This document shows positions 26,265 to 53,524 of a stretch of 64,000 nt of DNA, one piece after another (position 1 is the first letter of the stretch; each line of letters opens with the position of its first letter). The notes below the pieces were generated by a model. That model did not search any database, had not been told where the DNA came from, and saw only the letters and a list, made by a program, of their open reading frames with translations. The stretch covers positions 124,001 through 188,000 of the IMG/VR virus record IMGVR_UViG_3300009158_000031, one strand, 5' to 3'. The position numbers and the translations under genes are program-made.

Positions 26265-29200
26265 TTGAGCGCTAGACAAGTAAATGCACAAGAAGCAATT
26301 GTTTCCATCACTAGCAAGATGGAAGCGATGCTTCAGCAAGTGCAAACCCAATATGATCAGTCAATTAATTTATTAACGTCATTAAATACAACAATGACGG
26401 TTGATGTTGGGCAGGAGCTTAAGAAGCAAACCTCCTTACTTATGTCCATTGAGGCTAAGATAGGAACCAATGGAGGTAGTGCTGGCGAAGATAAAATGTT
26501 AGGCAAGAATTTAGAAATTCTCTCTAAAGGATTGAGTAAACTTGTTAAAGCGGCTGAAAAAATTAAACCTAAAACTGGCGAACAAGTAAAAGAATTTTTA
26601 GGTAATATAGCTGATGGTCTAGCTAGTTTAACTGATAAAATAGATGAAAAGAAAGCTGAAATTATAGCGAATACGGTTATAACTTTAGCAAAAGGTGTTC
26701 TTCTATTTGGATTAGCAATGACTCTATATGTAATACTCGGACCAACCGCAATGTTAGGTTCAATGCTATTTGGATTAACAATTAGACTCTTATTGAAATC
26801 TGCCGGAGAAGTAGATGAAAATTCGCTTAAAGGAATTGTTGCAGTTGCTGCATTAGGTCTTGGTGTTATATATTTTGGATTAGCAATGGCTTTATATGCA
26901 GTTATTGGTATTCCTGCAATGCTAGGTGCTGTTTTATTTGGATTAACCGTTAGATTATTAGCTAAAACTGCCGGATTAAATGATCCTAAAGTTGCTGCTG
27001 GAATTGTCGGAATTGCTGCATTAGGTCTTGGAGCCATATATTTTGGATTAGCAATGTTGGGTTATGCAATTATCGGTATTCCAGCAATGCTAGGTGCTGT
27101 TTTATTTGGATTAACCGTTAGATTATTAGTGAAAACAGCTGGTTTAAACGATCCTAAAGTTGCTGCCGGAATGCAAGCCTTAATAGGACTTGGTAAAGCT
27201 ATTTTAATATTCGGTTTAGTTATGTTGGCTTATGCAATTATTGGTATTCCTGGATTGATTGGTGCTTTGGTTCTTGCATTAACTCTTAAACTTCTTTCGA
27301 AAAGTATTAAGTCAATGGGATCTAATATGGTCAGAAAAGGAATTATAAATATGGCTTTAGGAGCTATTGCTATTATTCTTCTCGGATTAACTATTATATT
27401 ATTTGCAAAAGAGGTTCCTATAATGAGTTCTCTTTATGTTATTCTTACCATTGGTGCATTTGCTTTAGCCTTCTATATAGTAGGTAAATTCTTTAATGAT
27501 ATATTAAAAGGAGCTCTTGCAGTTGCTGCTATAGGATTAGGTATATCATTCTTAGCCTTAGGTTTATTCTTTTATAAATCAGTTGGAATGACTTGGGAAG
27601 AAACCGCAATGTTAGGGGTTACTATCGCTGGTCTTGGATTAGTAATGGGAGGTGCTGGTGAATTCTTTATGGAAATTATTAAAGGATCCGCTGCAATGAT
27701 AGTCGCCGGAATTGCTCTAATAGTTATTTCTGCGGGTTTACTTGTATTCGCTCAAACTAAATTAACATTTCAAGATGCTGCTATTCTAGGAGCTACCATC
27801 TTAGGACTTGGTGTTGTAATGGGAATTGCCGGTGCTGGACCGGTACCTTTATTTATTGCATTAGGATCTGCCGCAATGATTGTTGCTGGTTTATCTTTAG
27901 TAGTTCTTTCTCTTGGTCTTGGAGCATTCAAGCTAACCGGATTTAAAGTTGAAGATGCTTTATCTTTAGGAGCTGCTATAGGTGCAGTTGGTGTAACTAT
28001 GGGTATTGCCGGATTAGCCTCTCCATTTATTATATTAGGTAGTGCAGCAATGGCTATTGCCGGTGTTGCATTAATGCCTCTTGCATTAGGATTGGCCGTA
28101 TTCAAAGCTATTGGTTGGAAAAAAGGAACCGATGATGAGAGTTTAAAATCTGCATTAGGTTCCGTAATATCTGGTTTTCTTGGAGGAGATATGCCTGGTG
28201 GTATTCTTGCATCAATTAAATTTGCTGCTCAAGCGGCAGCTAGATCGGTTCTTCTATTCATAGCAATTCCGCCATTAATTCTTGCCGGTGTTGCTTTATT
28301 GTCTATCTCTTTAGGATTAGCCGCATTTAAGAAAGCCGGATTTACTTCTTCGGATTCTGCTAATATGGAAGCTGCTATTGGTGGTATCGTTGGAGCATTC
28401 TCATTAGTTACTGATAAAGAACGTCAGAAGAAAATGGGAATCAATGTCGATTGGATGGATTTAATGATTGGTATTATGGCACTTTCACAAGCCGGAAATA
28501 CTCTATCTTCATTAGCAAAAGGAATTCAAGCATTTGCTAATCTTTCAGTTATTGAATATGAGGTGGTTGGTGCTGGAACTAAAAATGCTAAAATCGTTCC
28601 TAAAGGAATTACCAAATTAAGCAAGTCCGATTTTGAATCAGCGGCTTATGGAATGGCACAAGTAATTGGGGCTATTGCCGAACCATTCGCTTTAGTTGGT
28701 AAATTAGAAAAGGGTACACCATCTGGAAATCCTTTCTATGATGCAATATTCGGTGGTGGATTTGTATCTGCCGGTATTGATGCATTATCAAGATCTGGAG
28801 ATACTCTTGTTAATTTAGCAAAAGGAGTACAAGCATTCGCTAATCTCGAAATAACTGAATATGAAGTAATTGGTGCTGGAACTAAAAATGCTAAAATAAT
28901 TCCTAAATCGATTACGAAAATGTCGCCGACAGATTTTGCTGCTGCCGGAGCCAATATAGCAAAAATTATTGCGGTTGTTGCCGAAGCATTCGCTAAAGTA
29001 GGTAAAGATGAAGCTGCATCTGAAGGAGTATTCTCTGGAGGATTCTTATCTAAAGGAGTCGAAGCATTAGCTAACATAGGAGAAAATCTACAAGGAATTA
29101 CTGAATCGGTTATTAAAGTTGCAACAGGAACATTTACTCCAATGACTGCCGTTCAAGACGGAAAAGGTACTAAATTAGTACCTGGAACTCCTATTAAAAT

Positions 29201-30005
29201 TTCTAAGGCAATGTTAGAAGAGGCTGCCAGAACAATTAATAGTGTTATAATGGTTCTAGGACAGGGAATGATGGACTTCGGAACATTCGTTGACGAGAAT
29301 GAAGATTCTATCGACGAAGCTATTGAATACATTCCTACAATGAGTGAAGCCTTAATGAAGATGGTAGAGGTTAATGAAAAATTCTCTAAGATAACAGATG
29401 CAGATAAAGGAGTTAAATCATTTACTAGTTTTAATCAAGCAGTAATGGATGCTTATGATCCAGCCAAGCAGAAAAATCTTCCTCAAACAGCAGGATATAT
29501 GATGCTATTCGTTAAAGGTATTGAAAGACTTGCTGCACCGGCCGATCAATTAGGTAAGGTTGCATCTAACGTAGAACGTATAGAAGCAGCAATGAAAAAT
29601 ATCAAAACTCATGTTAATGGATTTGATATGGAAAGGCTTACTAAAACGGATTCTCTATTTAAGTCAATGGCGATTTTATCAAAGAATCCTGAAGCTATGG
29701 CTGCTAAAATTAATGATACTCTTAAAGTTGCATTTGAAGAATTTGGTAAAGCTCTTACCGAAGCAATTAAAGAATCCGGTGGTGGTGGTGGCGGTGGCGG
29801 TGGTGGAATACTTGAAGGCGTTAAAGATATTTTGACTCCAGGTCCAGCAGGTGCTGCTCCAAAAGCTACCGATCCAAAAGGAAAGGCTGCTCCTGGACCT
29901 GCTCCTCTCACTGCAGAGGCGATTGGAGCTGCTATGTCGAAAGCTTTAAATGCCGCTTCAATTACCATAAAACCGGCAGCAAACGCGGTATTCAAAACCA
30001 CCTAA
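26265..30005 (+). CDS. Tape measure protein
   Basis: 1246 aa, Gly/Ala/Leu-rich amphipathic repeats (56-aa period near 26850-27200, about 100-aa period near 28520/28820); follows the chaperone genes; TTG start uncertain. Confidence 0.8.
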   Translation: MSARQVNAQEAIVSITSKMEAMLQQVQTQYDQSINLLTSLNTTMTVDVGQELKKQTSLLMSIEAKIGTNGGSAGEDKMLGKNLEILSKGLSKLVKAAEKIKPKTGEQVKEFLGNIADGLASLTDKIDEKKAEIIANTVITLAKGVLLFGLAMTLYVILGPTAMLGSMLFGLTIRLLLKSAGEVDENSLKGIVAVAALGLGVIYFGLAMALYAVIGIPAMLGAVLFGLTVRLLAKTAGLNDPKVAAGIVGIAALGLGAIYFGLAMLGYAIIGIPAMLGAVLFGLTVRLLVKTAGLNDPKVAAGMQALIGLGKAILIFGLVMLAYAIIGIPGLIGALVLALTLKLLSKSIKSMGSNMVRKGIINMALGAIAIILLGLTIILFAKEVPIMSSLYVILTIGAFALAFYIVGKFFNDILKGALAVAAIGLGISFLALGLFFYKSVGMTWEETAMLGVTIAGLGLVMGGAGEFFMEIIKGSAAMIVAGIALIVISAGLLVFAQTKLTFQDAAILGATILGLGVVMGIAGAGPVPLFIALGSAAMIVAGLSLVVLSLGLGAFKLTGFKVEDALSLGAAIGAVGVTMGIAGLASPFIILGSAAMAIAGVALMPLALGLAVFKAIGWKKGTDDESLKSALGSVISGFLGGDMPGGILASIKFAAQAAARSVLLFIAIPPLILAGVALLSISLGLAAFKKAGFTSSDSANMEAAIGGIVGAFSLVTDKERQKKMGINVDWMDLMIGIMALSQAGNTLSSLAKGIQAFANLSVIEYEVVGAGTKNAKIVPKGITKLSKSDFESAAYGMAQVIGAIAEPFALVGKLEKGTPSGNPFYDAIFGGGFVSAGIDALSRSGDTLVNLAKGVQAFANLEITEYEVIGAGTKNAKIIPKSITKMSPTDFAAAGANIAKIIAVVAEAFAKVGKDEAASEGVFSGGFLSKGVEALANIGENLQGITESVIKVATGTFTPMTAVQDGKGTKLVPGTPIKISKAMLEEAARTINSVIMVLGQGMMDFGTFVDENEDSIDEAIEYIPTMSEALMKMVEVNEKFSKITDADKGVKSFTSFNQAVMDAYDPAKQKNLPQTAGYMMLFVKGIERLAAPADQLGKVASNVERIEAAMKNIKTHVNGFDMERLTKTDSLFKSMAILSKNPEAMAAKINDTLKVAFEEFGKALTEAIKESGGGGGGGGGGILEGVKDILTPGPAGAAPKATDPKGKAAPGPAPLTAEAIGAAMSKALNAASITIKPAANAVFKTT

Positions 30006-33935: not shown

Positions 33936-34535
33936 ATGGCTAAAAACGAATCATTAAAGGAATTAGGCGTTTCATTTAAAGAAACCAGATCAGAACGAGT
34001 ATTTACCGATTTGTATCATCGACTTAAACCAGGATTAACAAATTATGTCTTTCAAATTGTAAAAGATTACGATATGTCTAATCATATTGTTTCGGCGGTA
34101 ATGTCTGAGGTTTACAATAAAATCGATAAATATGATCCCAAATGGCATATATCAACGTGGATTTATCGAATAGCATACACTCATGCTTGTGGTTATCTTC
34201 GTGCTAAAAAAGTACAAAGAACGGTTTCCCTTTCTGCATTCGATAACGATGAAAATCGTAACCGTTTACATAAACTTGAATTTGAATCTATCGAAGATCA
34301 TCGTGATGCAATCGAAAAACGTGAGGATGCTGATGCGGAAAAAGCACACATTTTATACCTTCGTACAATCGTCGATAATTTACCAATCGAATATCGTGAG
34401 GTAGTAGTTGAAAAATTCTATAACGATTTAAAATACGATGAAATCGCCGAGAAACTAAATATTCCATTACATACCGTAAAAAATCGAATTTCTCGAGGAA
34501 AACGAATCATTCAAGAAGAACTTACCAAAAAATAA
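33936..34535 (+). CDS. ECF-type RNA polymerase sigma-70 factor
   Basis: Region 2 (VYNKIDKYDPKWHISTWIYRIAYT); region 4 HTH (LPIEYREVVVEKFYNDLKYDEIAEKLNIPLHTVKNRISRGK). Confidence 0.92.
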   Translation: MAKNESLKELGVSFKETRSERVFTDLYHRLKPGLTNYVFQIVKDYDMSNHIVSAVMSEVYNKIDKYDPKWHISTWIYRIAYTHACGYLRAKKVQRTVSLSAFDNDENRNRLHKLEFESIEDHRDAIEKREDADAEKAHILYLRTIVDNLPIEYREVVVEKFYNDLKYDEIAEKLNIPLHTVKNRISRGKRIIQEELTKK

Positions 34536-34551: not shown

Positions 34552-34620
34552 CAATTGTCACTTATCAATGATAGGTGACAATTGCTGTTCCTACAGACCG
34601 CTAGTAGTAAGCAATTTTTT
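34552..34620 (+). terminator. Long hairpin plus overlapping alternative hairpin with T-tract after the sigma gene
   Basis: caattgtcacttatc-aat-gataggtgacaattg (34552-34584); aattgct (34580-34586) can instead pair with agcaatt (34610-34616), which is followed by tttt. Confidence 0.5.
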
Positions 34621-34658: not shown

Positions 34659-36581
34659 ATGAAGAAATTGCTTAAATCATTTCTATTGATGATTATTCTA
34701 GCTCTTCCAATTCTTACGTTTGCACAATCTGGTCCACCAGCACCAAGTGCAGGAATCTGGGCTTTAATAGATACCAACTATTCTGTTGGTACATCAACAT
34801 TAGGAATATCAAAAGCCAGAATAACTCTTAAAAACACAACCAGTACATTATATACTGGTGTACAATTTAGAGTATTCTACGACAAAAATGCTTTCTCATC
34901 TGCATCAGTTGCTTTAGTAGGATCAACAACTAATCTTTACCTACAATCAGTAGATAACAATACGGCAGGTTATGTTACTATGTCTCTAGTTTATACAGGA
35001 AATAGTTCAGCATATACATTAGCAGACGGTGAAAGATTTGAAATTACATTTAATCACGTATCATCCGGTGCATTTTTTGCCTTACCAAGTATTAGTGCAT
35101 TAACCTGGACTGGTTCTGCTACTTTTCCTGAGATTGCTGCTGAGCAAACTGGTTTAGATACGGTCTTAAATTTACATAGTTATGGTGGAACTTGGTTAAG
35201 ACCACAACTTAGTTATCATGGTAAATTTACTAACGTAACCGCAACACCAGCTAAAAACCTTCCGCTTTCATTAGAAAAAAAAGTTAAGATTGGTGGAACT
35301 TGGGGTGCACATGCAACTTACACAACTAACCTTTTAGGAGTATTTTCATTTACGGAATTAATCGATACAACTTATTATGATGTTCGTCTTTCTATTCAAG
35401 GAGATACAATGTCAGTTGGTAACGTTATTTCAACTGCCGATGCTCAGCTAATTAATCAATGGGTTCTTGGTGGAGCTACTCCTTCTGGATTTGATTTTTA
35501 TACTGGAGACGTTAATTCATCTAATGGAATATCCATCACCGATGCTTATGGAGTATTTGGTAGAATTGCCGGTAGATTTAGCACTTGGCCTAACTCAGTT
35601 AAAGATGTAAAATTCTTTACTGAAACAGAATATACCACAATCGTTGGAACCCCAACCACAAACTTTACTGGAACTATTTCAGGAGCTACGAACTTCTATT
35701 TTGATATACTTCCTGGAGCACCAGATAGTGTAACTTATTATGTATGTGTACCTGGTGATGCAAATGGAACCGGTTATCATATGGCTCGTCTAACCCCAAT
35801 AGATATTATTGTTAGTCCACCTGCCGGAACTCCTATCCAACAAGAAAATGTTATTGATATGAAAGTTGAATATGACTTTCCTACATCTTCTATGGAAATA
35901 GGTCTACCTTCACTTTCTGTTAAAGAAGGAAATCTAGTGGAACTTCCAGTTACTGTTAAAACTAATGGAAAAGATATTTCAGCATTACAACTTTCAATGC
36001 TATACGATCAAACGCTTTTACAATTCAAAGATGTTAAGAATTCTCAAAAATCCATGTTTTGGATGTCTTCTATTAATCCTATGAATGGTATTATAGAATG
36101 GGCCGGATATGATCCTTCATCTAACAAATCATATATGATTTCTGATGGATATGAAATATTCACTCTTCGTTTCTTGGCTTTGAAACCTCAAGCAGAATGG
36201 AATCAATCACCTCTTTATACTTCTCGTAAATTTTCAGGTGATGCTTATTCTAAAGATATGAATATTACTCCAGCAAATGGAATTTTGATTGTCGCTAAAA
36301 TGGCACCTATTTCTGGAGGTTTAAGTGAAAATGAAATGACTATATTTCCAAATCCAACATCTGGTGAAATTACCATCGACTTTACCGTAAAACAGACAGG
36401 TCGAGTAAAGTTATATATAGTAGGCATGAATGGAGAAATCAATCACATAATTCTTGATAAAGATATGCCAGAAGGTGAATATGTTTATACTTCAAATATT
36501 AATCATCTTACTCAAGGAATTTATGTTGCTTCTTTACAAGCCAAGAATCAAACTATAAGTAAAAAAATAATCAAAAACTAA
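34659..36581 (+). CDS. Secreted cohesin-Ig-dockerin-cohesin protein with T9SS C-terminal sorting domain
   Basis: Signal peptide; cohesin-like YTGVQFRVFYDKNAF; dockerin/EF-like ISTADAQLI..GDVNSSNGISITDAY; second cohesin LVELPVTVKT..ISALQLSMLYDQTLLQF; CTD TIFPNPTSGEITI..GIYVASL..KKIIKN. Confidence 0.82.
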   Translation: MKKLLKSFLLMIILALPILTFAQSGPPAPSAGIWALIDTNYSVGTSTLGISKARITLKNTTSTLYTGVQFRVFYDKNAFSSASVALVGSTTNLYLQSVDNNTAGYVTMSLVYTGNSSAYTLADGERFEITFNHVSSGAFFALPSISALTWTGSATFPEIAAEQTGLDTVLNLHSYGGTWLRPQLSYHGKFTNVTATPAKNLPLSLEKKVKIGGTWGAHATYTTNLLGVFSFTELIDTTYYDVRLSIQGDTMSVGNVISTADAQLINQWVLGGATPSGFDFYTGDVNSSNGISITDAYGVFGRIAGRFSTWPNSVKDVKFFTETEYTTIVGTPTTNFTGTISGATNFYFDILPGAPDSVTYYVCVPGDANGTGYHMARLTPIDIIVSPPAGTPIQQENVIDMKVEYDFPTSSMEIGLPSLSVKEGNLVELPVTVKTNGKDISALQLSMLYDQTLLQFKDVKNSQKSMFWMSSINPMNGIIEWAGYDPSSNKSYMISDGYEIFTLRFLALKPQAEWNQSPLYTSRKFSGDAYSKDMNITPANGILIVAKMAPISGGLSENEMTIFPNPTSGEITIDFTVKQTGRVKLYIVGMNGEINHIILDKDMPEGEYVYTSNINHLTQGIYVASLQAKNQTISKKIIKN

Positions 36582-36586
36582 TAATC

Positions 36587-36916
36587 ATGTCAGAAGAAAC
36601 ACAAGATCAAAATGACGGAACTTGGTCAGGTCTAAAGAAAACTTTAATAGGAACTCTAACCACAGTTATTGCTGGCGGAGGAATCTGGTTATCTACTACT
36701 CTATTTGGTGGTGGACACGAAGATAAAGAAGAAACTAAAACCGAGCAAGCTGCACCAGCACCAGTTGTAATTAATGTACAACAAAATCAAGAGAATACTC
36801 AAAAACAACAAAACAATGGTGGTACCACTACTATCATCAAAGAAAGAGTTATAGAGAAAGCTCCTGCTGAAAAGAAAGAAGAAAAGAAAAAAGAATCTGA
36901 GGATGCTCCTTGGTAA
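36587..36916 (+). CDS. Single-TM membrane protein
   Basis: TLIGTLTTVIAGGGIWLSTTLFG helix; low-complexity exported tail. Confidence 0.6.
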   Translation: MSEETQDQNDGTWSGLKKTLIGTLTTVIAGGGIWLSTTLFGGGHEDKEETKTEQAAPAPVVINVQQNQENTQKQQNNGGTTTIIKERVIEKAPAEKKEEKKKESEDAPW

Positions 36917-36935
36917 TTAAAAAAATTAAAACAAA

Positions 36936-37232
36936 ATGGCTAAATTACAAAACACCAAACCTGGATTCTTTAAGAGAATGTTTATGGATGATAACGATAT
37001 TAATGAAAAATCTATCGTTGGATTTTGTGCTTTCATTGTGATGGTTATTGCATTTGGAGTTGATATTTATACCGGTTTCAAAGGTATGCCTTTCGAGATT
37101 AATGAATTCATTTTTGATGGATTTATGGTTATTACTTTAGGTGCATTTGGTATCGCTTCAGTTGATAAGTACTTAACCGGAAAGAATAAAAATGAGAGTT
37201 CATCATCTAATGAAGAACCGCCTATTGAATAA
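36936..37232 (+). CDS. Two-TM membrane protein
   Basis: SIVGFCAFIVMVIAFGVDI and IFDGFMVITLGAFGIA helices. Confidence 0.6.
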   Translation: MAKLQNTKPGFFKRMFMDDNDINEKSIVGFCAFIVMVIAFGVDIYTGFKGMPFEINEFIFDGFMVITLGAFGIASVDKYLTGKNKNESSSSNEEPPIE

Positions 37233-37242
37233 ACCAAAATTT

Positions 37243-37962
37243 ATGAAAGCGATTATAATTTCTATATTGCTATTATTTTTTGCTCAAGCAAGTATTGCTC
37301 AGATTGGTACTATAAAATCTGAGCAATATCAAGCTGAGTTTGAAAAGAAGCAATCTCTTGATGCATTACCAGAATATACTGATACAGTTAAAGTTCCCAT
37401 TCAAATTCTTAAAATTGGAATCAATTCAGAATTGTATGAGATGTACCCTGAATTGAAAGATAAAAGAGTTGGTTTAGGTGTAACTAATATTGTTCTAGAA
37501 TATCTTGAATATACTAATCGTTTTGTATTCACTGAAGATAAACTTGAAATTAAAGAACGTATGGTTCAGCAATTTAAAGCATCTGATAAAGGATTTACTG
37601 AAAATAAAATAGACGGTAGAGGAAAGATCAAACTCGCTAAATATTTTGTTTATATTGAGGTCTATGATTTTTCTGTATCTGATGATGAAGTTGTAAAAAT
37701 TAATGGCGAATCAAAAACCACTCAAATAACTCGTTTAGGTTTACAAATTAAATTTGTGGATGCTGAGACTGGTGAAATTATTATGGGATCCGGTCTTGGT
37801 GAAGCATCAACTATTAAGACGGTTTCTATTTTAGATGGAGTTGATGATAGTGAAATTAAGTTCAATCAATCACACATTGGTATAACTACCAAGAAATCTC
37901 TTGAAACGGCATCTTCTAGAATTGTTTCGAGAATGATTAAAAAAGGCATATTCAAATCGTAA
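37243..37962 (+). CDS. CsgG/HfaB-like exported protein
   Basis: Signal peptide from ATG 37243 (MKAIIISILLLFFAQASIAQ); GLGVTNIVLEYL..RFVFTE, YFVYIEVYDFSV, LQIKFVDAETGEII..G.G follow the CsgG pattern. Confidence 0.75.
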   Translation: MKAIIISILLLFFAQASIAQIGTIKSEQYQAEFEKKQSLDALPEYTDTVKVPIQILKIGINSELYEMYPELKDKRVGLGVTNIVLEYLEYTNRFVFTEDKLEIKERMVQQFKASDKGFTENKIDGRGKIKLAKYFVYIEVYDFSVSDDEVVKINGESKTTQITRLGLQIKFVDAETGEIIMGSGLGEASTIKTVSILDGVDDSEIKFNQSHIGITTKKSLETASSRIVSRMIKKGIFKS

Positions 37963-39726
37963 ATGTACATTAGATCAATTATATTCTTTATTGCCTTTTG
38001 GTTCACGTCAATAGCAAGTTATGGTCAGTCTTTTAATTATTCATATACTGATCCTTGTACAGGTGTAGTCAAGACAATACCGGTTTCTACTAATGGAATA
38101 ACGGTAACCTATTACGGCCAAATCCATACATTTCAACCTACTGATTTTTACAATGGAGGTTTTGAAAGTTGGGCTCAAACGGTATACTCATCCTTTGGAA
38201 ATAATAATCCATGTGCTTCTATTGTAGGTCTTCCTACTGGAATTAATATAGCACAAAACACAGCAATCAATTTCTTAAGTATTATAAATTCTCTATCTGC
38301 TATTAGTGATTTATCTTCTTTAGGTGGAGCTACTAATTTATTATCAGGAATTGGAAGTGTTTCCGGTTCTACTAGTAATAAAAAGAAAGATGATAAAAAG
38401 AGTGGATCCGCTCAAACAGACGGAACAACCACAACTACTGAAGGTAGCGTATCAACTCCTAATGGAGGATCAACAACATCAGGTTCATCAGGAAATTCCG
38501 GATCCACTCAAACGAATGGAACTGCTACAAATACGGAAGGAAGCGTATCAACTCCAAGTGGAGGTTCAACAACTTCAGGATCTTCTACTAATCAAGGAAC
38601 TGGAAATACAAATCCAACTCAACCTACTCAAACAGGAGGTCAAACAACTCAACCACCGGTAGGTTCTACTCAAAATCAAACTGGCACAAATGGAAATAAT
38701 AACACGAGTAATACCAATAGTAATTCTAGTGGGTCTAGTAATACTAGCAATAATACAAACAATACTCAACCTACGACTGGTACAAATCAAACACAAAACC
38801 CTACCACAACCCAAAATGGAAATTCACAGAGTGGAAGCACAAATTCAAATAGCGGCAATGCTAACCAAAATGGGAGTGGATCCTCTAATAGCAATGGATC
38901 GAGCAACCAAAATGGTAGCGGATCAAACTCAAACGATGGATCTTCTCAAGAAGGTAAAAGTGGAAGCGGAAATACTCAAGGAAGCGAAACGCCTAAAGAA
39001 GAAGGTGGAAAAACCAACCTAGTAGGTGGAGCCGTTTCGACTTTAGCAAATTCAACTAGTTCTGGTAAAGCCGCTTCAACTGAAAGTAGAAAACCCACAA
39101 TTCTAGGAAGTAGTGATTTTGTTGGATTTAATTTTAAAGATTCCGATATTGATCGAGGAGCTAAATTTACAGGAGGTTATACTTCATTAAGATGGGATGG
39201 ACAAAGATCCCATGGAATTTTAGTTGATTATACAACTGCTCTTAAAGGACCAAATATTACTGGATTTTATGCAATCATAAAGAAGAAGAGAATTGATTTA
39301 ATATCAACTACGCTTACATTAGGATTTGATCGAAAGACTTCGGTTTATGGAACTTTGGCTCTTGGTCAAATGTGGAATATTGATAAAAAGAAAAAACTTA
39401 AAGCAGTATACATGTTAACCGGATCATTTGGTTCTGTATATGGCGAAGAATTTGTTGGTACTGCTGCAATTGCCGGTGTAATGTACGATTGGAAAATTTC
39501 TAAACGAATAGATATTAAATTAATGGGGCTATATGTCTATGCTCCATATGTTAGTTATTATAATGACATACTACTAAAATCTCCTCATGTAGTTCTTCCT
39601 ATCATTGGAACTAACATTGGACTTACGAAGAGATTTAAGTTAAACATAAATGGTGGTGGAGCTTGGGCATTACAAGAAAATGCATTAAACTACACCATAA
39701 TGATGGGTACTAGATTTTTATTATGA
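37963..39726 (+). CDS. Outer-membrane beta-barrel protein with a long Ser/Thr/Asn/Gly-rich stalk
   Basis: Signal peptide; about 220-aa low-complexity linker with a 31-aa duplication (TEGSVSTPNGGSTTSGSS / TEGSVSTPSGGSTTSGSS); amphipathic strands ending NYTIMMGTRFLL. Confidence 0.65.
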   Translation: MYIRSIIFFIAFWFTSIASYGQSFNYSYTDPCTGVVKTIPVSTNGITVTYYGQIHTFQPTDFYNGGFESWAQTVYSSFGNNNPCASIVGLPTGINIAQNTAINFLSIINSLSAISDLSSLGGATNLLSGIGSVSGSTSNKKKDDKKSGSAQTDGTTTTTEGSVSTPNGGSTTSGSSGNSGSTQTNGTATNTEGSVSTPSGGSTTSGSSTNQGTGNTNPTQPTQTGGQTTQPPVGSTQNQTGTNGNNNTSNTNSNSSGSSNTSNNTNNTQPTTGTNQTQNPTTTQNGNSQSGSTNSNSGNANQNGSGSSNSNGSSNQNGSGSNSNDGSSQEGKSGSGNTQGSETPKEEGGKTNLVGGAVSTLANSTSSGKAASTESRKPTILGSSDFVGFNFKDSDIDRGAKFTGGYTSLRWDGQRSHGILVDYTTALKGPNITGFYAIIKKKRIDLISTTLTLGFDRKTSVYGTLALGQMWNIDKKKKLKAVYMLTGSFGSVYGEEFVGTAAIAGVMYDWKISKRIDIKLMGLYVYAPYVSYYNDILLKSPHVVLPIIGTNIGLTKRFKLNINGGGAWALQENALNYTIMMGTRFLL

Positions 39727-40715
39727 GAAAGTTTATCACCACAATAATTGCCATCTTGTTAACCGGTGCTACATATGCACAAGCGTTTACATATTCAGGC
39801 TACATATATAACGCAAATGGTACAGGAGCAGTAAATGTTCCAGTAAAGTTATATAAGAGAACAACTCCAAATATAACTGGTTTTACGTCTCAAACAAACT
39901 ATAATGGTCACTCATATTATAGATCAACCGGTTCTATGACGTGGACTGATGCAAAACAAGCTTGCATAAATATGAATGGGCACTTGGTTACAATTGCTAA
40001 CGCCTCTGAACAATCATTCGTATTTAATACATGGCCATCAGGATGGATTGGATTTACTGATGAATCGGTTGAAGGTACATTTGTATGGGTAACTGGAGAA
40101 CCTGTAAATTATACCAATTGGAATCCTGGTGAACCAAATAATGCAGGCAATGAAGATTATGCTCAATTTGTTAGTGGCGGTAAATGGAATGATCTACCTA
40201 ACACATCTTTACCTTATGTAATTGAATTTGATTATATTGTAACCACTACTCCATGGGTTTTGCATCAAACCGTATACACAAACGCTAGTGGATATTATTC
40301 ATTCAATCAATTGACAAATCCATCAGTTGAATGGTATATTCGATATGATGCACCAACACCAATCACAATACATCAAACATCTGATTTAAGTACAATTGGA
40401 AATATCGTATTAGGAGTTACCACCAAGAAATCTTTACATTGGAATATGTTCGATGTGAATAATGATGGAAATATAACGATATCTGATGCATACTATGTGA
40501 GTGGAAAGAAAAACGGAATATTTGCAAGTTGGATTGGATCTCAATCATCAGCCTTATATACGCCAGCCCAATTTAATATTCTAAATACCGGAACTACTAA
40601 TTTAAAGGCAACATACCCTGGAGTAAGCTCATTTACAATATCAACTCCAGTGAATGGTGGATCTGCAAATTATTACCTAATTGCTCCAGGTTATGCTGGA
40701 CAAGTAACATACTAA
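39723..40715 (+). CDS. Secreted Ig-like/C-type lectin/dockerin-like protein
   Basis: Signal peptide; CTLD motifs MTWTDAKQAC, GHLVTI, WIGFTDE..EGTFVWVTGE..NYTNWNPGEPNN..EDYA..GKWNDL; FDVNNDGNITISDAY. Confidence 0.88.
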   Translation: MRKFITTIIAILLTGATYAQAFTYSGYIYNANGTGAVNVPVKLYKRTTPNITGFTSQTNYNGHSYYRSTGSMTWTDAKQACINMNGHLVTIANASEQSFVFNTWPSGWIGFTDESVEGTFVWVTGEPVNYTNWNPGEPNNAGNEDYAQFVSGGKWNDLPNTSLPYVIEFDYIVTTTPWVLHQTVYTNASGYYSFNQLTNPSVEWYIRYDAPTPITIHQTSDLSTIGNIVLGVTTKKSLHWNMFDVNNDGNITISDAYYVSGKKNGIFASWIGSQSSALYTPAQFNILNTGTTNLKATYPGVSSFTISTPVNGGSANYYLIAPGYAGQVTY

Positions 40716-40721
40716 ATATTT

Positions 40722-41177
40722 ATGAAAAATCTACTTCTTATATTACTTCTGCTTCCAATGTTATCATTCGGACAAATCAATTCATGTGTTCATGTTGATT
40801 CGGTTTATTCAACCGCTAAATATAAGGATATGGGTAATCGTGATATTCGCTTTGGTATTAGACAAATGACCGAGGATATTCTTTCTGAAAAATATTGTAT
40901 CAATTCATCATCTCCGGATGTAGATGTAGAGGTATTTTTCTTTGGTTTACCTAGAAGTACTTATAGAATAATTGGAGTAGAGAAAACTAATCAAATAACT
41001 CAAGTTGGCATTCGTATTTATTATAATGGTGTTAAATACGAAGCTTATGGAGAATCTGATACTGAAATACGAACTGTGATGTTAGAGATTGTTGAAGGAC
41101 AGACTCCATTTTCAAAGATGACGGTTTCTAATGCGATAAAAAAAGCAATAGAATCATGCGTATCTCAAATGCCTTAA
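40722..41177 (+). CDS. Exported protein, possibly CsgG/LptE-like fold
   Basis: Signal peptide; alpha/beta pattern ending in helix VSNAIKKAIE. Confidence 0.45.
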   Translation: MKNLLLILLLLPMLSFGQINSCVHVDSVYSTAKYKDMGNRDIRFGIRQMTEDILSEKYCINSSSPDVDVEVFFFGLPRSTYRIIGVEKTNQITQVGIRIYYNGVKYEAYGESDTEIRTVMLEIVEGQTPFSKMTVSNAIKKAIESCVSQMP

Positions 41178-41617
41178 TTATATTCTTACTCTTTATACCA
41201 TCATTCATATTTGGACAAATTAAAGTTCAAGATGTTGGTGACGGATGGCAAAGCAAAGTAGATTCTGCTATTACTCTTATACAGAAAACTGATACCATCG
41301 CCTATCAAATCTTAATAGAAAATTGTAAGGATGTGGAATTTATTATTGGTAAGTACTCTACTACTAAACCTCCTTATACGATTGCTATAACCACTAAAGA
41401 TATGAATCTAAATTCCATCAATAATATAGCAGCCGTGTTAATACATGAATCATATCATCTTTTTATATACAATAACAAAATAGTATATTCACCAACCGAT
41501 GAAGAAGCCACTTGCTATGAAAGAGAATATGAATTTCTTTGTAAACTCCCTAATGTTGAAGATTGGCTATTTCTTAATGCCATGAACAACATCATCCTTT
41601 TCCGAAATCGGAAGTAA
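41156..41617 (+). CDS. Exported zincin-like metallopeptidase
   Basis: Signal peptide; IAAVLIHESYH (HExxH) followed by EEATCY. Confidence 0.65.
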   Translation: MRISNALIIFLLFIPSFIFGQIKVQDVGDGWQSKVDSAITLIQKTDTIAYQILIENCKDVEFIIGKYSTTKPPYTIAITTKDMNLNSINNIAAVLIHESYHLFIYNNKIVYSPTDEEATCYEREYEFLCKLPNVEDWLFLNAMNNIILFRNRK

Positions 41618-43138: not shown

Positions 43139-43543
43139 ATGAAAAATCTAATTCTACTTCGAGGATTACCAGGTTCTGGAAAATCCACAGCTGCAAAACT
43201 ATTTCAAGGATCAGGATATTCTTCACATTATGAAGCCGATATGTATTTCCTTAATAAAGAAACTGGTGAATATCAATTTGATCCGAGTAAATTAAAATTG
43301 GCTCATAATTGGTGTGCTATACAAACTCAAAAAGCAATGGTTGATGAGATACCTACTATTATAATCTCGAATACATTTACTCAAGAATGGGAAATGGACA
43401 ATTATCGTGAATTAGCAAAAATGCACGATTATCAAGTATTTACTCTAATTGTAGAAAATCGTCATGGTGGAGTTAATGTACATGGAGTACCTGATGATAA
43501 ATTAAAAGCAATGGAAGACCGTTTTGAACTTAAATTAATATAA
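43139..43543 (+). CDS. P-loop kinase (polynucleotide-kinase/AAA_33-like)
   Basis: LILLRGLPGSGKST, HYEADMYF, IISNTFT, NVHGVP. Confidence 0.88.
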   Translation: MKNLILLRGLPGSGKSTAAKLFQGSGYSSHYEADMYFLNKETGEYQFDPSKLKLAHNWCAIQTQKAMVDEIPTIIISNTFTQEWEMDNYRELAKMHDYQVFTLIVENRHGGVNVHGVPDDKLKAMEDRFELKLI

Positions 43544-43544
43544 C

Positions 43545-43763
43545 ATGAAAAATGACAGACACATTTGGGAAGGTTGGACAGCTCAATCTTTTATCGATGA
43601 ATTACAACCAATCTTTAATATGATAATCCAAAATCAATCTCATATTAAACCTTTTAAAACAAAAGAAGAACTTAAAACCTGGTGTAAGGATCATCAACCT
43701 TACTATAAGAAACATATACCAGAAGTATACAATCATTTCTTAGAACTTACTGAATTAAAATAA
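43545..43763 (+). CDS. Hypothetical protein
   Basis: 72-aa ORF in operon. Confidence 0.6.
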   Translation: MKNDRHIWEGWTAQSFIDELQPIFNMIIQNQSHIKPFKTKEELKTWCKDHQPYYKKHIPEVYNHFLELTELK

Positions 43764-49046: not shown

Positions 49047-49816
49047 TAACTACTGCATTAATAGGTGGACTTGGAAATTACATGTTCCAAATTGCCACAG
49101 CTCATTCTATCGCTAAAGATGTAAGAACTGATGCCTTTTTTGATTTAAGTAGAACCGGCCAATCACAAAGACACATCAATTATTATTTAGATAATATCTT
49201 CAAAAATGTAAAGTTCGGAACCCCAATCCCGAAATACTTATATAACGAGAAAAAATTCAGTTTTGATACGATCCCAGCAGTAGATGATTTATATTTAAGC
49301 GGATATTTTCAAAGTGAAAAGTATTTTGAAAAATACGCTAAAGAAATACGAGATCTATTTAGATGCAAAGAAACTGAAATTAAATTAAGGGAACATATCT
49401 CACAAATCGATTTTACTTGCTCAATACATGTTAGACGAGGAGATTATCTTCAATATCCGAATAAACACAATCAATCACCTGCAGATTATTATAAAACAGC
49501 AATTCAATTAGTAAAAGATCAATTTCCTAATTATGAAGTAACTTTTCTGGTATTCTCTGATGATATACAATGGTGTAAAAATCATTTCATTGGAATGGAA
49601 TATATGTTCATTGAAGGATTCGAAGATTGGGAAGACATGATACTCATGTCTTTATGTGATGCTAATATTATAACAAATTCCACCTTTTCTTGGTGGGCAG
49701 CTTGGTTAGGTGAAACTCCTAATAAGCTAATCATTGCACCAGAAAAATGGTTTGGTTCAGAAGGACCACAAGATCAACAAGATATTATACCTGAACGATG
49801 GATAAAATTAAGATAA
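49043..49816 (+). CDS. GT11 alpha-1,2-fucosyl/colitosyltransferase
   Basis: GGLGNYMFQ, GYFQSEKYF, SIHVRRGDY, FSDDIQWCK, NSTFSWWAAWL. Confidence 0.92.
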   Translation: MITTALIGGLGNYMFQIATAHSIAKDVRTDAFFDLSRTGQSQRHINYYLDNIFKNVKFGTPIPKYLYNEKKFSFDTIPAVDDLYLSGYFQSEKYFEKYAKEIRDLFRCKETEIKLREHISQIDFTCSIHVRRGDYLQYPNKHNQSPADYYKTAIQLVKDQFPNYEVTFLVFSDDIQWCKNHFIGMEYMFIEGFEDWEDMILMSLCDANIITNSTFSWWAAWLGETPNKLIIAPEKWFGSEGPQDQQDIIPERWIKLR

Positions 49817-50628
49817 GAGATTATGCCTTTGCTCATGCAAAGTACAGTACAGATTTTCAAAACTCTCAATTTATTGAATGGGATAGAGGACCTATAACTG
49901 CTGAAGACAAAGTGGTATTCTATACTGACAATTCATTAGAATTAGTTCACCGAGAATCTTCGCAAAATGCACATTGTAAAAAGATTGCATGGTTGCTAGA
50001 ACCGGTGGATGTATGTCCTCATTCATACGATTTCATCCGAATAACTCGTTATTTTGATTTAGTTCTTTCGCATAACATAGATTTCGTAAATGAAATGCAA
50101 AATCGAGGAGTTGAAGCATTATGGGTACCATTTGGTGGTTGTTGGATAAAACCAGAAGATCAACGAATATATGATAAACATGGAATGACTTCAATCATTG
50201 CATCAGATAAACAAATGACGGTTGGTCATCGTTTACGACACTCAGTCATTGCAGCAACTAGAGATAAACTAACTGTTCGAGGAAGAGGCTATACGCCTGT
50301 TGATTATAAGCTCGATTTACTCAAAGATTTTAGATTCCATGTAGTTATTGAAAACGCTAATATTGCTGGTTGGTTTACTGAAAAGCTAATTGATTGCTTT
50401 AGAACAGGAACCGTTCCTATTTATTGGGGAAATCCTCTGATCGAAGAAATTTTTGATCGTGAAGGAATGATACTTTGCTACAATGAACAACAAATTATTG
50501 ATGCAATAAATTCTGTTACTCTAGAAAAATATGATACGATGAAAGAGGCAATACAACGAAATTTCGAAATTGCACAAACCTACCTAATTGCCGAAGATTA
50601 TATCTATAAAAATATTCTCAATAAATGA
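49798..50628 (+). CDS. GT10-like fucosyltransferase-family protein
   Basis: FRFHVVIEN..GWFTEKLIDCFRTGTVPIYWG. Confidence 0.78.
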   Translation: MDKIKIRDYAFAHAKYSTDFQNSQFIEWDRGPITAEDKVVFYTDNSLELVHRESSQNAHCKKIAWLLEPVDVCPHSYDFIRITRYFDLVLSHNIDFVNEMQNRGVEALWVPFGGCWIKPEDQRIYDKHGMTSIIASDKQMTVGHRLRHSVIAATRDKLTVRGRGYTPVDYKLDLLKDFRFHVVIENANIAGWFTEKLIDCFRTGTVPIYWGNPLIEEIFDREGMILCYNEQQIIDAINSVTLEKYDTMKEAIQRNFEIAQTYLIAEDYIYKNILNK

Positions 50629-52713: not shown

Positions 52714-52752
52714 TATTAAAACAATCATATAAAATAAAACAAACAAATTAAA

Positions 52753-53268: not shown

Positions 53269-53284
53269 TAGAAAGAAACTCCTA

Positions 53285-53524
53285 ATGTTCAAGAAATTCT
53301 TTCAATTTATAAGTGAAGGCAAAAAACCAAAACCGCATGAGATCCAACAAGCTGACCCTCAAAGTCCTCCTGTAGATCCATCAATAGTAACTAAATGCCC
53401 TAAGTGTGGAAGTACTGGTATGATTTGCGATTGCTATACTGATGATTATTATAATGCAAAGCTGCCTCAACAGGCACCAAGACCTAATAAAAAAGTAAAA
53501 CCTAAAACGAAAAAAGATGAATAA
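53285..53524 (+). CDS. Small CTS-like, Cys-containing protein
   Basis: MFKKFFQFISEG; CPKCG..CDC. Confidence 0.55.
   Translation: MFKKFFQFISEGKKPKPHEIQQADPQSPPVDPSIVTKCPKCGSTGMICDCYTDDYYNAKLPQQAPRPNKKVKPKTKKDE

What the first reader, a model, noticed from the sequence alone, without database searches (positions are those of the whole stretch)
34659..41617. Phage-encoded cell-surface display system: T9SS-sorted cohesin/dockerin scaffold, dockerin-lectin, CsgG-like channel and beta-barrel stalk
Seen: eight contiguous genes, six with signal peptides and two membrane-anchored. The 640-aa protein reads cohesin, Ig, dockerin-like (GDVNSSNGISITDAY), cohesin, then a type-A T9SS CTD (IFPNPTSG..GIYVASL..KKIIK). 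The 330-aa protein is an Ig strand-set split by a C-type lectin domain and ends in a matching dockerin-like motif (FDVNNDGNITISDAY). Also present are a CsgG/HfaB-like protein, an OM beta-barrel with an about 220-aa Ser/Thr/Asn stalk, and an exported HExxH peptidase. Established: T9SS cargo is exported by the Bacteroidota host and anchored at the surface after CTD cleavage; cohesin-dockerin pairs assemble cellulosomes; CsgG is an OM secretion pore. Inference: the phage uses the host T9SS to build a self-polymerising, lectin-decorated coat on the infected cell. Possible roles are receptor masking against superinfection, protection from grazing, or sticking the infected cell to new hosts or particles. 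I know of no characterised phage system of this kind.
Basis: partly seen in the sequence, partly recalled or inferred. Interest (0 to 1): 0.88.

Follow-up and report, generated by a model that had tools for sequence, protein, structure and literature searches.

The report
Phage operon displaying lectins on host
An operon shared by hundreds of large phages of Flavobacterium-type bacteria seems to make the infected cell export a cohesin scaffold through the host's type IX secretion system and attach a swappable sugar-binding protein to it; the parts are real and conserved, but their benefit to the phage is untested.

Summary
The eight genes exist as described, and most domain calls hold. Above curated cut-offs are one cohesin, a type A T9SS sorting domain and a C-type lectin. 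Supported but below cut-off are the N-terminal cohesin and both dockerin-like modules. The 240-aa protein has the CsgG fold, but pore formation is doubtful. The 587-aa protein ends in a predicted 12-stranded outer-membrane barrel.

The cluster is phage-borne. It occurs in the complete genome of the cultured Flavobacterium phage vB_FspM_immuto and in at least 80 IMG/VR contigs. Module proteins are 53-64% identical where the terminase is 25%.

Each complete locus carries two cohesin-type and two dockerin-like modules. The head of the dockerin protein is swapped between loci (C-type lectin, LamG, PA14, GEVED, Ig_7). All six secreted proteins follow the Bacteroidota Q-rule.

Best reading: a phage-supplied modular lectin adhesin, exported by host Sec and T9SS, with its own envelope platform. 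Surface anchoring, cohesin-dockerin binding, self-polymerisation and the biological role remain inference. I found no published description. Phage T9SS cargo in general was reported in 2020.

The parts
34659..36581 (+). Scaffold protein, 640 aa: signal peptide, cohesin-like N domain, beta-sandwich, dockerin-like module, post-dockerin domain, cohesin, T9SS type A CTD
   Evidence: Pfam Cohesin E 8.1e-13 and Por_Secre_tail E 1.7e-10. TIGR04183 35.7 bits. Found in 81/81 loci. Split into two genes in immuto and in L055, L056 and L058.
34728..35192 (+). N-terminal cohesin-like domain (aa 24-178)
   Evidence: Pfam Cohesin 15.6 bits, below GA. 25 of 38 orthologues hit Cohesin at E<0.1, best 5.5e-4. 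No PDB cohesin hit.
35193..35396 (+). Beta-sandwich (aa 179-246), shared with the lectin protein
   Evidence: The HMM of this segment hits the 330-aa protein at aa 19-49 and 173-197. Weak transthyretin, Big_1 and CarboxypepD_reg hits.
35397..35603 (+). Dockerin-like module (aa 247-315); the second Ca-loop positions D284, N286 and D295 are invariant
   Evidence: Best PDB hit of the family profile is dockerin 4uyp_B, E 0.0017, covering residues 3-70 of 75. Invariant columns. The HMM hits the 330-aa protein at E 4.3e-11.
35874..36308 (+). C-terminal cohesin (aa 406-550)
   Evidence: Pfam Cohesin 39.8 bits, GA 24.1. PDB cohesins at E 0.003.
36324..36578 (+). T9SS type A C-terminal sorting domain (aa 556-640)
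   Evidence: PF18962 41.5 bits (GA 27) and TIGR04183 35.7 bits (cut-off 23). PDB CTD 8glj_D at E 0.035.
36587..36916 (+). 109-aa bitopic inner-membrane protein: N-in, Gly-rich TM segment, Pro/Lys/Glu-rich periplasmic tail ending in an invariant Trp
   Evidence: Found in 78/81 loci. All 63 distinct homologues end in W. No family hit.
36936..37232 (+). 98-aa two-TM protein; accessory, probably lysis-related rather than core
   Evidence: Found in only 18/81 loci. Two hydrophobic segments. Its immuto homologue (45% identity) lies next to the chitinase and holin genes, not in the module.
37192..37962 (+). CsgG-fold protein; the likely start is the ATG at 37243, giving 239 aa
   Evidence: Family profile against PDB: only CsgG is significant, E 8.9e-6. 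AF2 pLDDT 86.5; the top 25 Foldseek hits are all CsgG, best E 1.4e-9. Distant relatives pass the Pfam CsgG GA. Found in 81/81 loci and the most conserved part.
37963..39726 (+). 587-aa outer-membrane protein: two-Cys N-domain (aa 23-130), S/T/G/N-rich linker (aa 131-375), 12-stranded barrel (aa ~379-587)
   Evidence: AF2 model has 12 strands, pLDDT 77. Foldseek hits are autotransporter translocators, KdgM/NanC, FapF and COG4313. Found in 80/81 loci. Total length varies from 413 to 736 aa. No Pfam or PDB sequence hit.
39723..40715 (+). 330-aa variable-head adaptor: beta-sandwich interrupted by a C-type lectin (aa ~58-168), dockerin-like module (aa 218-270), post-dockerin tail
   Evidence: Lectin_C 63.5 bits. 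Dockerin_1 21.5 bits against GA 22.9. Heads swapped among loci.
40722..41177 (+). 151-aa secreted mini-paralogue of the CsgG-fold protein
   Evidence: hhalign against the CsgG-like family: probability 97.5%, E 7.2e-12, 118 columns. Found in 65/81 loci.
41156..41617 (+). 153-aa secreted protein with invariant HExxH (aa 97-101) and EE (aa 116-117): putative small gluzincin-type peptidase
   Evidence: Invariant columns in 28 orthologues. No Pfam, NCBIfam or PDB family. Found in 54/81 loci.
41599..41614 (+). Terminator-like hairpin at the end of the last gene
   Evidence: Weak evidence: the number of such sites in the region is no higher than in shuffles.

Best explanation
This is a mobile operon of large myophages that infect Flavobacteriia. 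It makes the infected cell build a modular glycan-binding complex at or beyond its outer membrane.

Proposed steps:
1. Six proteins cross the inner membrane by Sec and signal peptidase I. All expose an N-terminal Gln, the Bacteroidota Q-rule.
2. The scaffold carries a type A CTD, so the host T9SS (PorV route) takes it across the outer membrane.
3. The scaffold offers two cohesin-type modules.
4. The variable-head protein carries a matching dockerin-like module with a single Ca site. It is recruited to the scaffold, either in the periplasm before folded export or outside the cell.
5. In the split version of the operon, the logic is anchor cohesin-CTD, then adaptor (cohesin plus dockerin), then lectin-dockerin.
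6. The co-conserved envelope proteins form the platform. They are an inner-membrane tether with an invariant C-terminal Trp, a CsgG-fold protein with its mini-paralogue, and a 12-stranded barrel with a long low-complexity linker. The platform would anchor the complex, or export the partners that lack a CTD.

In function this is a phage-supplied, exchangeable-head analogue of host T9SS lectin adhesins such as RemA. The likely benefit to the phage is control over what the infected cell binds: aggregation or attachment to glycan-bearing cells or particles, or masking of surface glycans.

What is shown: domain identities, conservation, phage origin, module stoichiometry and head swapping. What is inferred: the binding, the localisation, the role of the platform and the benefit.
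For: Domain identities.

Phage origin and conservation:
- The operon is in the complete genome of the cultured phage immuto, among replication genes and far from the structural and lysis genes.
- 237 IMG/VR stretches encode the CsgG-like protein. In the 80 that were kept the gene order is conserved and the flanks are not.
- Module proteins are 53-64% identical between the window and immuto. The terminase is 25% and the sheath 29%.

Assembly logic:
- Exactly two cohesin-type and two dockerin-like modules occur in 56 loci. Most of the rest are truncated loci or sub-threshold hits.
- Ca-loop positions 1, 3 and 12 are invariant in both dockerin families.
- Neither the window nor the immuto genome holds any other cohesin, dockerin or CTD.

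Head swapping: Lectin_C, Lectin_C+LamG, Lectin_C+Ig_7, PA14, GEVED and an unassigned ~170-aa domain occupy the same slot.

Export signals: Gln after the signal peptide is invariant or nearly so in the alignments. The Q-rule is described in PMC5837995.

Host precedent: RemA is a type A CTD lectin adhesin that is both anchored and released in F. johnsoniae (PMC12618676).
Against: - No interaction was tested.
- Both dockerin-like modules and the N-terminal cohesin fall below Pfam cut-offs. The first Ca loop of the dockerin is degenerate.
- The lectin protein has no CTD, so how it would leave the periplasm is unknown.
- The CsgG-fold protein may not be a pore.
- Type A CTD cargo can be released rather than anchored.
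- The AF2 model does not place the linker of the barrel protein inside the pore (residues 1-40 have pLDDT below 50). Its N-domain may therefore be periplasmic.
- Distance-matrix correlation did not reveal which cohesin pairs with which dockerin.
- There are no expression or proteome data.
Confidence: 0.45

Rival explanations
1. The complex is released rather than anchored. The T9SS exports the scaffold, with the lectin riding on it, and the CTD is cleaved. The soluble multivalent lectin complex then acts at a distance. It could agglutinate or coat neighbouring cells or particles, or occupy glycans that other phages use as receptors.
For: In F. johnsoniae the AmyB type A CTD leads to release, and the RemA CTD leads to both anchoring and release (PMC12618676). 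Two cohesins plus an internal dockerin would allow multivalent complexes.
Against: It gives no role to the strictly co-conserved membrane proteins: the inner-membrane tether, the CsgG-fold pair and the barrel.
Confidence: 0.2
2. It is a periplasm-spanning envelope complex, not a display system. The inner-membrane tether, CsgG-fold proteins and outer-membrane barrel bridge the envelope. The lectin binds peptidoglycan or another periplasmic glycan. The purpose would be to stabilise the envelope of a cell carrying a large phage burst, or to block DNA entry by superinfecting phages.
For: - Only one of the six exported proteins has an outer-membrane export signal.
- The 109-aa protein looks like a periplasm-spanning tether.
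- The CsgG-fold protein has charged hairpins and no lipid anchor in this copy.
- The N-domain of the barrel protein may be periplasmic.
- EPN-type C-type lectin domains can bind GlcNAc-type sugars (general knowledge).
Against: - The type A CTD is present on every scaffold in the 81 loci.
- Rapid swapping of lectin, PA14, LamG and GEVED heads fits a variable external target better than conserved peptidoglycan.
Confidence: 0.12
3. It is an export-and-anchor device for a phage-specified polymer, analogous to Pel, holdfast or curli systems. The CsgG-fold ring and the barrel form the conduit, as PelC/PelB, HfaB or CsgG do. The lectin scaffold then holds a phage-made polysaccharide or fibre on the cell.
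For: - Foldseek also matches the CsgG-fold model to PelC and LptE, and the barrel to FapF and to the oligosaccharide porins KdgM and NanC.
- Both immuto and the window phage encode glycan-synthesis genes elsewhere in the genome.
Against: - The glycan genes are not linked to the module.
- No curlin-like or Fap-like subunit, and no CsgE/F, was found.
- The low-complexity linker varies in length and has no conserved repeat.
- The CsgG hairpins look non-membrane.
Confidence: 0.1
4. The proteins are virion adhesins, or the cluster is host DNA or a chimeric assembly.
For: Swappable heads resemble the behaviour of receptor-binding proteins.
Against: - All six carry conserved Q-rule signal peptides.
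- The module lies among replication genes, 65 kb or more from the structural block in immuto.
- No immuto structural gene carries a cohesin, dockerin or CTD.
- The cluster is in an isolate genome and in 80 viral contigs.
- The GTDB scan found it only on phage-like MAG contigs. True cellular relatives have the CsgG-like gene alone.
Confidence: 0.03

Closest known systems
RemA of Flavobacterium johnsoniae, a T9SS type A CTD lectin adhesin (PMC12618676)
   Same: It has a Sec signal, a type A CTD and a lectin domain. It is exported by the T9SS/PorV route, lies at the cell surface and is partly released. It binds glycans and promotes cell-cell and cell-surface contacts.
   Different: RemA is one host polypeptide. 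Here the lectin and the CTD sit on separate phage proteins that would have to be joined by cohesin/dockerin-like modules. The lectin type differs and is exchangeable. Extra envelope genes come with it.
Cellulosome scaffoldin systems: anchoring and adaptor scaffoldins with dockerin-bearing subunits, e.g. Acetivibrio cellulolyticus ScaB dockerin, PDB 4uyp
   Same: Cohesin and dockerin-like modules are present. The split form of the operon follows an anchor, adaptor, payload logic. The Ca-loop residues are conserved.
   Different: The payloads are lectins or adhesin domains, not enzymes. The anchor is a T9SS CTD, not SLH or sortase. There are only two cohesins and two dockerins. The dockerin has one intact Ca loop and scores below the Pfam cut-off. 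The system is phage-encoded in a Gram-negative host. Binding is untested.
Phage-encoded T9SS cargo in 'Cryophage' (Bellas et al. 2020, PMC7468147)
   Same: Phage genes carry type A sorting domains, are variable between variants, and include a PA14 protein. They were proposed to hijack the host T9SS.
   Different: Those are single cargo genes (endoglucanase, GH39, PA14) that each carry their own CTD. No cohesin/dockerin, CsgG-fold protein, barrel or conserved operon was described.
Curli channel CsgG (PDB 4uv3, 3x2r) and the related ring lipoproteins PelC and LptE
   Same: The fold is the same (Foldseek E 1.4e-9). The profile hits CsgG at E 8.9e-6. The Tyr-Pro of the constriction-loop region is conserved. 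Many orthologues are lipoproteins.
   Different: The window copy has no lipobox. The TM1-equivalent hairpin is six residues shorter and charged. CsgA, B, E and F are absent. Cellular relatives are fused to kinase or caspase domains, so a pore role is not implied.
12-stranded outer-membrane barrels: type Va autotransporter translocators (EstA, NalP), FapF, KdgM/NanC
   Same: The protein has a C-terminal 12-stranded barrel preceded by a linker and an N-terminal domain. This layout resembles autotransporters and FapF.
   Different: There is no sequence similarity to any of them. No confident pore-spanning helix is predicted. The linker is a 245-aa S/T/G/N tract of variable length. The topology of the N-domain is unknown.
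Host T9SS type B adhesin operons: adhesin, PorP/SprF-like barrel and PorE-like anchor (PMC12618676)
   Same: The operon logic is similar. A secreted adhesin is encoded next to an outer-membrane barrel and an envelope anchoring protein, made in matched amounts.
   Different: The CTD here is type A. The barrel gives no PorP/SprF match in Pfam. The anchor candidate has the CsgG fold, not a PorE-like one.
Sortase B and substrate modules of huge gut phages (Yuan and Chen 2026 preprint, 10.64898/2026.10.24.761521)
   Same: [quoted passage not shown]
   Different: The mechanism is Gram-positive-type cell-wall sorting. That paper does not mention T9SS, cohesin, dockerin, lectin or CsgG.

Membership tests
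Cohesin (PF00963) | Sequence match above the Pfam gathering score | tested here: met
   C-terminal module: 39.8 bits against 24.1. PDB cohesins at E 0.003 with the family profile.
Cohesin (PF00963), N-terminal module | Sequence match above the Pfam gathering score | tested here: inconclusive
   15.6 bits, E 0.02. 25 of 38 orthologues hit Cohesin at E<0.1, none above GA. hhalign against the C-terminal cohesin gives E 0.046. No PDB cohesin hit.
Cohesin/dockerin pair | Ca2+-dependent binding of dockerin to cohesin | not testable with these tools
   No multimer prediction or binding assay was available. The 2:2 module count is only consistent with pairing.
Dockerin type I (PF00404) | Sequence match above the Pfam gathering score | tested here: not met
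   330-aa protein: 21.5 bits against 22.9. 640-aa protein: no Pfam hit. The family profile hits dockerin 4uyp_B at E 0.0017.
Dockerin type I (PF00404) | Two duplicated segments, each with a 12-residue Ca-binding loop followed by a helix | tested here: not met
   The second loop is intact and invariant at positions 1, 3 and 12 (D284/N286/D295 and D244/N246/D255). The first segment keeps the helix but lacks the loop ligands (direct reading).
T9SS type A cargo (TIGR04183 / PF18962) | C-terminal sorting domain above cut-off plus an N-terminal Sec signal | tested here: met
   35.7 bits against 23, and 41.5 against 27. The signal peptide has an invariant Gln at +1.
T9SS type A cargo | T9SS-dependent export and CTD cleavage | not testable with these tools
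   Needs expression in wild type and T9SS mutants.
C-type lectin domain (PF00059) | Sequence match above cut-off and the Ca/sugar-site motifs EPN and WND | tested here: met
   63.5 bits against 22.6. PDB E 1.5e-31. EPN and WND are present in the lectin-type orthologues.
C-type lectin domain (PF00059) | Canonical two disulfides | tested here: not met
   The whole 330-aa protein has one Cys. The aligned Cys positions are replaced.
CsgG (PF03783) | Sequence or fold homology to CsgG | tested here: met
   The window protein itself gives no Pfam hit. The family profile hits only CsgG in PDB, E 8.9e-6. The top 25 Foldseek hits are CsgG. Relatives at 30-37% identity pass the Pfam GA.
CsgG (PF03783) | N-terminal lipobox (lipoprotein) | tested here: not met
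   The window copy has a signal peptidase I type signal and no Cys. Many orthologues do have an L-x-S-C lipobox.
CsgG (PF03783) | Two membrane-compatible beta-hairpins forming the 36-stranded pore | tested here: inconclusive
   Long hairpins are predicted. The TM1-equivalent is six residues shorter than in E. coli CsgG and carries about six charged residues. The oligomer was not modelled.
Curli system | CsgA/B subunits and CsgE/F accessory proteins in the locus | tested here: not met
   No such Pfam, NCBIfam or PHROG hits in any module protein.
Type Va autotransporter | C-terminal 12-stranded barrel with a pore-spanning helix; Pfam Autotransporter match | tested here: inconclusive
   12 strands are predicted, and EstA and NalP are the best Foldseek E-values. 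There is no Pfam hit. The pre-barrel segment has pLDDT below 50.
Zinc metallopeptidase (gluzincin type) | HExxH plus a downstream Glu ligand; match to a peptidase family | tested here: inconclusive
   The motifs are invariant. There is no family match: SprT-like E 0.09 and no PDB hit.
Known anti-phage defence or exclusion systems (PADLOC) | Match to a PADLOC model | tested here: not met
   No hit for any of the eight proteins.

The most novel reading that the evidence does not exclude
The operon is a self-contained, phage-borne surface-assembly system of a kind not known in cells. A CsgG-fold ring and a 12-stranded barrel would form a new outer-membrane export or anchoring route for proteins that lack a CTD. 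A T9SS-delivered cohesin scaffold would assemble them into a cellulosome-like 'lectinosome'. Its exchangeable heads would be selected like receptor-binding proteins, so that infected cells capture specific glycan-bearing partners, such as fresh hosts, or cloak their own receptors.
Probability: 0.2. Interest if true: 0.9.

Novelty: new variant of a known kind. Interest (0 to 1): 0.72.

Why it matters
Phages are known to change host surfaces with single genes, such as exclusion lipoproteins and O-antigen modifiers. Single T9SS cargo genes in phages have also been noted. This case is a conserved multi-gene envelope module with a cohesin/dockerin-type assembly logic and a swappable lectin head.

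It is abundant. 5,916 90%-identity clusters of the CsgG-like protein score E<=0.001, and 237 IMG/VR stretches encode it. It is far better conserved than the phage backbone.

If it does display or release adhesins, infected Flavobacteriia become 'sticky' in a phage-programmed, strain-specific way. Flavobacteriia are key degraders of polysaccharide and particles in lakes and seas. Such stickiness would bear on aggregation, particle attachment, superinfection and carbon flux.

It would also be the first cohesin/dockerin-type system coupled to the T9SS, and a ready-made modular surface-display scaffold for Bacteroidota. A cultured phage-host pair carries the module (vB_FspM_immuto on Flavobacterium sp. 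LMO8), so the question can be tested directly.

Tried and rejected
- Lysis cassette: rejected. In immuto the chitinase-like, holin and lysozyme genes lie elsewhere. Only the accessory 98-aa protein has a homologue there.
- Virion component: rejected.
- Host DNA or chimera: rejected.
- Known defence or exclusion system: no PADLOC hit.
- PHROGs: nothing for seven of the eight proteins; the 109-aa and 256-aa proteins gave only weak hits.
- PDB profile searches found nothing for the barrel, the 151-aa family, the HExxH family or the N-terminal cohesin-like domain.
- hhalign of the N-terminal against the C-terminal cohesin was weak, E 0.046.
- Mirror-tree correlation of cohesin and dockerin distance matrices, controlled for the CsgG-like protein, did not discriminate partners. 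Domains on one polypeptide simply correlate best.
- The sigma-70 promoter scan showed no enrichment: 43 sites against 45.5 expected. It does not model Bacteroidota promoters.
- The genome scan with the 33-sequence alignment failed for lack of conserved stretches and was redone with 11 sequences.
- Searching homologues of the barrel gave 1,004 unnamed proteins and no functional clue.
- Literature searches found no description of this module.

Full report
**What is there**

The interval 34659-41617 holds eight + strand ORFs of 640, 109, 98, 256, 587, 330, 151 and 153 aa. They are abutting or overlapping. No + strand terminator-like site lies inside the block, and one weak hairpin sits at its end.

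The window belongs to a large myophage. A large terminase, a tail sheath and both topoisomerase II subunits were identified. The identical sequence lies on IMG/VR contigs of 207 and 254 kb. GC content is about 32% throughout.

**Scaffold and lectin proteins**

The 640-aa protein has these parts:
- A C-terminal cohesin above the Pfam cut-off (39.8 bits against 24.1).
- A type A T9SS sorting domain above both curated cut-offs.
- An N-terminal domain that is cohesin-like only below threshold (15.6 bits). Cohesin is still the leading Pfam family for 25 of 38 orthologous N-domains.
- A dockerin-like middle segment that Pfam does not see. A profile of 30 orthologues has a cellulosomal dockerin (4uyp_B) as its best PDB hit, at E 0.0017 over the whole dockerin. 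Cohesins and a T9SS CTD follow in the hit list.

The 330-aa protein has these parts:
- A strong C-type lectin domain with EPN and WND motifs. It has only one Cys, so the canonical disulfides are missing.
- A dockerin hit just under the cut-off, 21.5 bits against 22.9.

HMMs built from the scaffold show that the 330-aa protein repeats the scaffold's middle part: sandwich, dockerin-like module and post-dockerin domain. The sandwich is split by the lectin. Ca-loop positions 1, 3 and 12 of the second dockerin segment are invariant in both families. The first loop is degenerate.

**Envelope proteins**

The 256-aa protein probably starts at 37243.
- A profile of 33 diverse relatives hits only E. coli CsgG in the PDB, E 8.9e-6.
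- An AlphaFold model (pLDDT 86.5) has CsgG as its top 25 Foldseek hits, best E 1.4e-9.
- Relatives at 30-37% identity pass the Pfam CsgG cut-off.

The pore reading is doubtful for three reasons.
- This copy has a signal peptidase I signal and no Cys, although many orthologues have a lipobox.
- The hairpin that corresponds to CsgG TM1 is six residues shorter and is rich in Asp, Glu and Lys.
- The nearest cellular relatives use the domain next to, or fused with, caspase and Ser/Thr kinase domains.

The 151-aa protein is a reduced paralogue of the same fold (hhalign probability 97.5%, E 7.2e-12).

The 587-aa protein has three parts:
- A two-Cys N-domain.
- A 245-aa linker that is 75% S/T/G/N and only 3% hydrophobic.
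- A C-terminal domain modelled as 12 antiparallel strands (pLDDT 77). It matches autotransporter translocators, KdgM/NanC, FapF and COG4313 channels.

The barrel family has no Pfam model, no PDB sequence hit and no named relative among 1,004 homologues. Protein length varies from 413 to 736 aa through the linker.

The 109-aa protein is N-in, with a Gly-rich membrane segment and a Pro/Lys/Glu-rich tail. All 63 distinct homologues end in Trp.

The 153-aa protein has invariant HExxH and EE but no family assignment.

The 98-aa two-TM protein is accessory. It is present in 18 of 81 loci. Its immuto homologue lies beside the chitinase-like and holin genes.

**Export signals**

All six proteins with signal-peptide-like N-termini have Gln immediately after the hydrophobic stretch. 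That Gln is invariant or nearly so in the family alignments. This is the Bacteroidota-specific Q-rule of signal peptidase I substrates (PMC5837995). It has been noted before in Porphyromonas phage proteins (PMC10367356). Together with the CTD, it ties the module to a T9SS-bearing Bacteroidota host.

**Phage origin and spread**

Among 50,697 GenBank phage records, only the three Flavobacterium phage vB_FspM_immuto isolates (four records; 160 kb, host Flavobacterium sp. LMO8) carry the module. There the gene order is:
1. lectin-dockerin
2. cohesinN-dockerin
3. cohesinC-CTD
4. tether
5. CsgG-like
6. barrel
7. mini-CsgG

The module sits among replication genes. Structural and lysis genes lie elsewhere in that genome. 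No other immuto gene carries a cohesin, dockerin-like module or CTD.

In IMG/VR, 237 stretches encode the CsgG-like protein. In the 80 loci kept plus the immuto locus, components occur as follows:

| Component | Loci (of 81) |
|---|---|
| Scaffold | 81 |
| CsgG-like | 81 |
| Variable-head protein | 81 |
| Barrel | 80 |
| Tether | 78 |
| Mini-paralogue | 65 |
| HExxH protein | 54 |

The flanking genes are not conserved.

The GTDB genome scan found the module only on phage-like MAG contigs. Genuinely cellular relatives (Ignavibacteriales, Rhodothermales, KSB1 and others) have the CsgG-like gene without the rest.

Between the window phage and immuto, the terminase is 25% identical and the sheath 29%. 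The CsgG-like protein is 63%, the lectin protein 53% and the N-terminal half of the tether 64%. The module is therefore exchanged among phages or strongly constrained.

**Stoichiometry and head swapping**

Searching all loci with the module HMMs gives exactly two cohesin-type and two dockerin-like modules in 56 loci. Most of the remainder are cut contigs or sub-threshold hits. The scaffold is one gene in most phages and two genes in immuto, L055, L056 and L058.

The head inserted in the sandwich of the dockerin protein varies between loci. It can be a C-type lectin, a C-type lectin with a nested LamG domain, a C-type lectin plus Ig_7, PA14, GEVED, or an unassigned domain of about 170 aa. The LamG form occurs in a close relative of the window phage. 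Most of these domains are typical of sugar-binding proteins and adhesins.

Mean pairwise divergence is lowest for the CsgG-like protein (0.22). It is highest for the head protein's dockerin and for the CTD (0.63 each).

**Interpretation**

The best-supported reading is a phage-supplied modular lectin complex made outside the cytoplasm.
- Sec export of six proteins and T9SS export of the scaffold rest on strong sequence signals.
- Recruitment of the head protein through cohesin/dockerin-type modules is inferred from module identity, the invariant Ca loop and the 2:2 count.
- The role of the tether, the CsgG-fold pair and the barrel is inferred only from strict co-conservation and overlapping genes. 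They could act as an anchor, or as an export route for partners without a CTD.

The nearest functional analogue is the host adhesin RemA. It is a type A CTD lectin that is both surface-bound and released in F. johnsoniae. In that species the CTD decides between release and anchoring (PMC12618676). Anchoring of the phage scaffold therefore cannot be assumed.

The rival readings are a released soluble complex, a periplasm-spanning envelope complex, and a polymer export or anchor device. They are not excluded. Virion and chimera readings are essentially excluded.

**Novelty**

- Phage-encoded type A T9SS cargo was reported for one cryoconite phage (PMC7468147).
- Phage outer-membrane proteins and a sortase-based display route were surveyed in a 2026 preprint. 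That preprint does not mention T9SS, cohesin, dockerin, lectin or CsgG.
- Papers that mention immuto concern DNA modification and polymerases.
- I found no description of this module.

Its components are known kinds. The combination, its phage-specific distribution and the exchangeable head are new. The function is unproven.

Noticed in passing
window 34553-34583: A perfect inverted repeat of about 10 bp (ATTGTCAC...GTGACAAT) lies in the 123-bp gap between the sigma-factor gene and the first module gene. No T-run follows it. It could be an operator or an RNA hairpin.
   Followed up: no
window 33936-34535: A phage-encoded ECF-type sigma-70 family factor lies directly upstream of the module (TIGR02937 69 bits against a cut-off of 42.9; phrog_1740). 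It is adjacent only in the closest relatives, 4 of 81 loci, so it is not part of the conserved cassette.
   Followed up: partly
window 18568-19140: A 190-aa ORF with a Q-rule signal peptide is 50% identical to immuto gp12, annotated DNA/RNA endonuclease G. In immuto that gene sits immediately upstream of the module. It looks like a second exported phage protein.
   Followed up: partly
window 36936-37232 and immuto 43342-43677 (L093): The homologue of the 98-aa two-TM protein in immuto lies next to the putative chitinase and holin genes. This suggests a lysis-type membrane protein that is only loosely associated with the module.
   Followed up: partly
window 15963-17661, 51535-52713, 57260-58441; immuto 49128-59944 (L093): Both phages carry glycan-synthesis genes: WecE-like transaminases, a pilin-glycosylation-like protein and glycosyltransferases. 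In immuto they form a 13-gene block. A link between a phage-made glycan and the phage lectin is possible but was not tested.
   Followed up: no
window 26265-30005: A 1246-aa ORF rich in A, G, L and I has no Pfam or PHROG hit. It lies in the stretch with the highest GC (0.36-0.39) and strong GC skew. It is probably the tape measure protein.
   Followed up: partly
window 36587-36916 and homologues in L001-L083: Every one of 63 distinct homologues of the 109-aa membrane protein ends in Trp, usually as APW, ESW or SPW. This points to a conserved C-terminal docking contact.
   Followed up: partly
L087, L090; proteins P0208, P0214, P0219, P0227, P0250: Cellular relatives of the CsgG-like protein (about 30-37% identity) are fused to, or adjacent to, caspase (Peptidase_C14) or Ser/Thr kinase domains. 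This looks like an undescribed periplasmic use of the CsgG fold.
   Followed up: partly
window 20843-21088 and 53517-53807: Two small ORFs (81 and 96 aa) have lipobox-like N-termini. They may be phage lipoproteins.
   Followed up: no
L004:12412-14082: In a phage 85-96% identical to the window around the module, the C-type lectin head carries a nested Laminin_G_3 domain (557 aa against 330 aa). This is a recent domain insertion in the head.
   Followed up: partly
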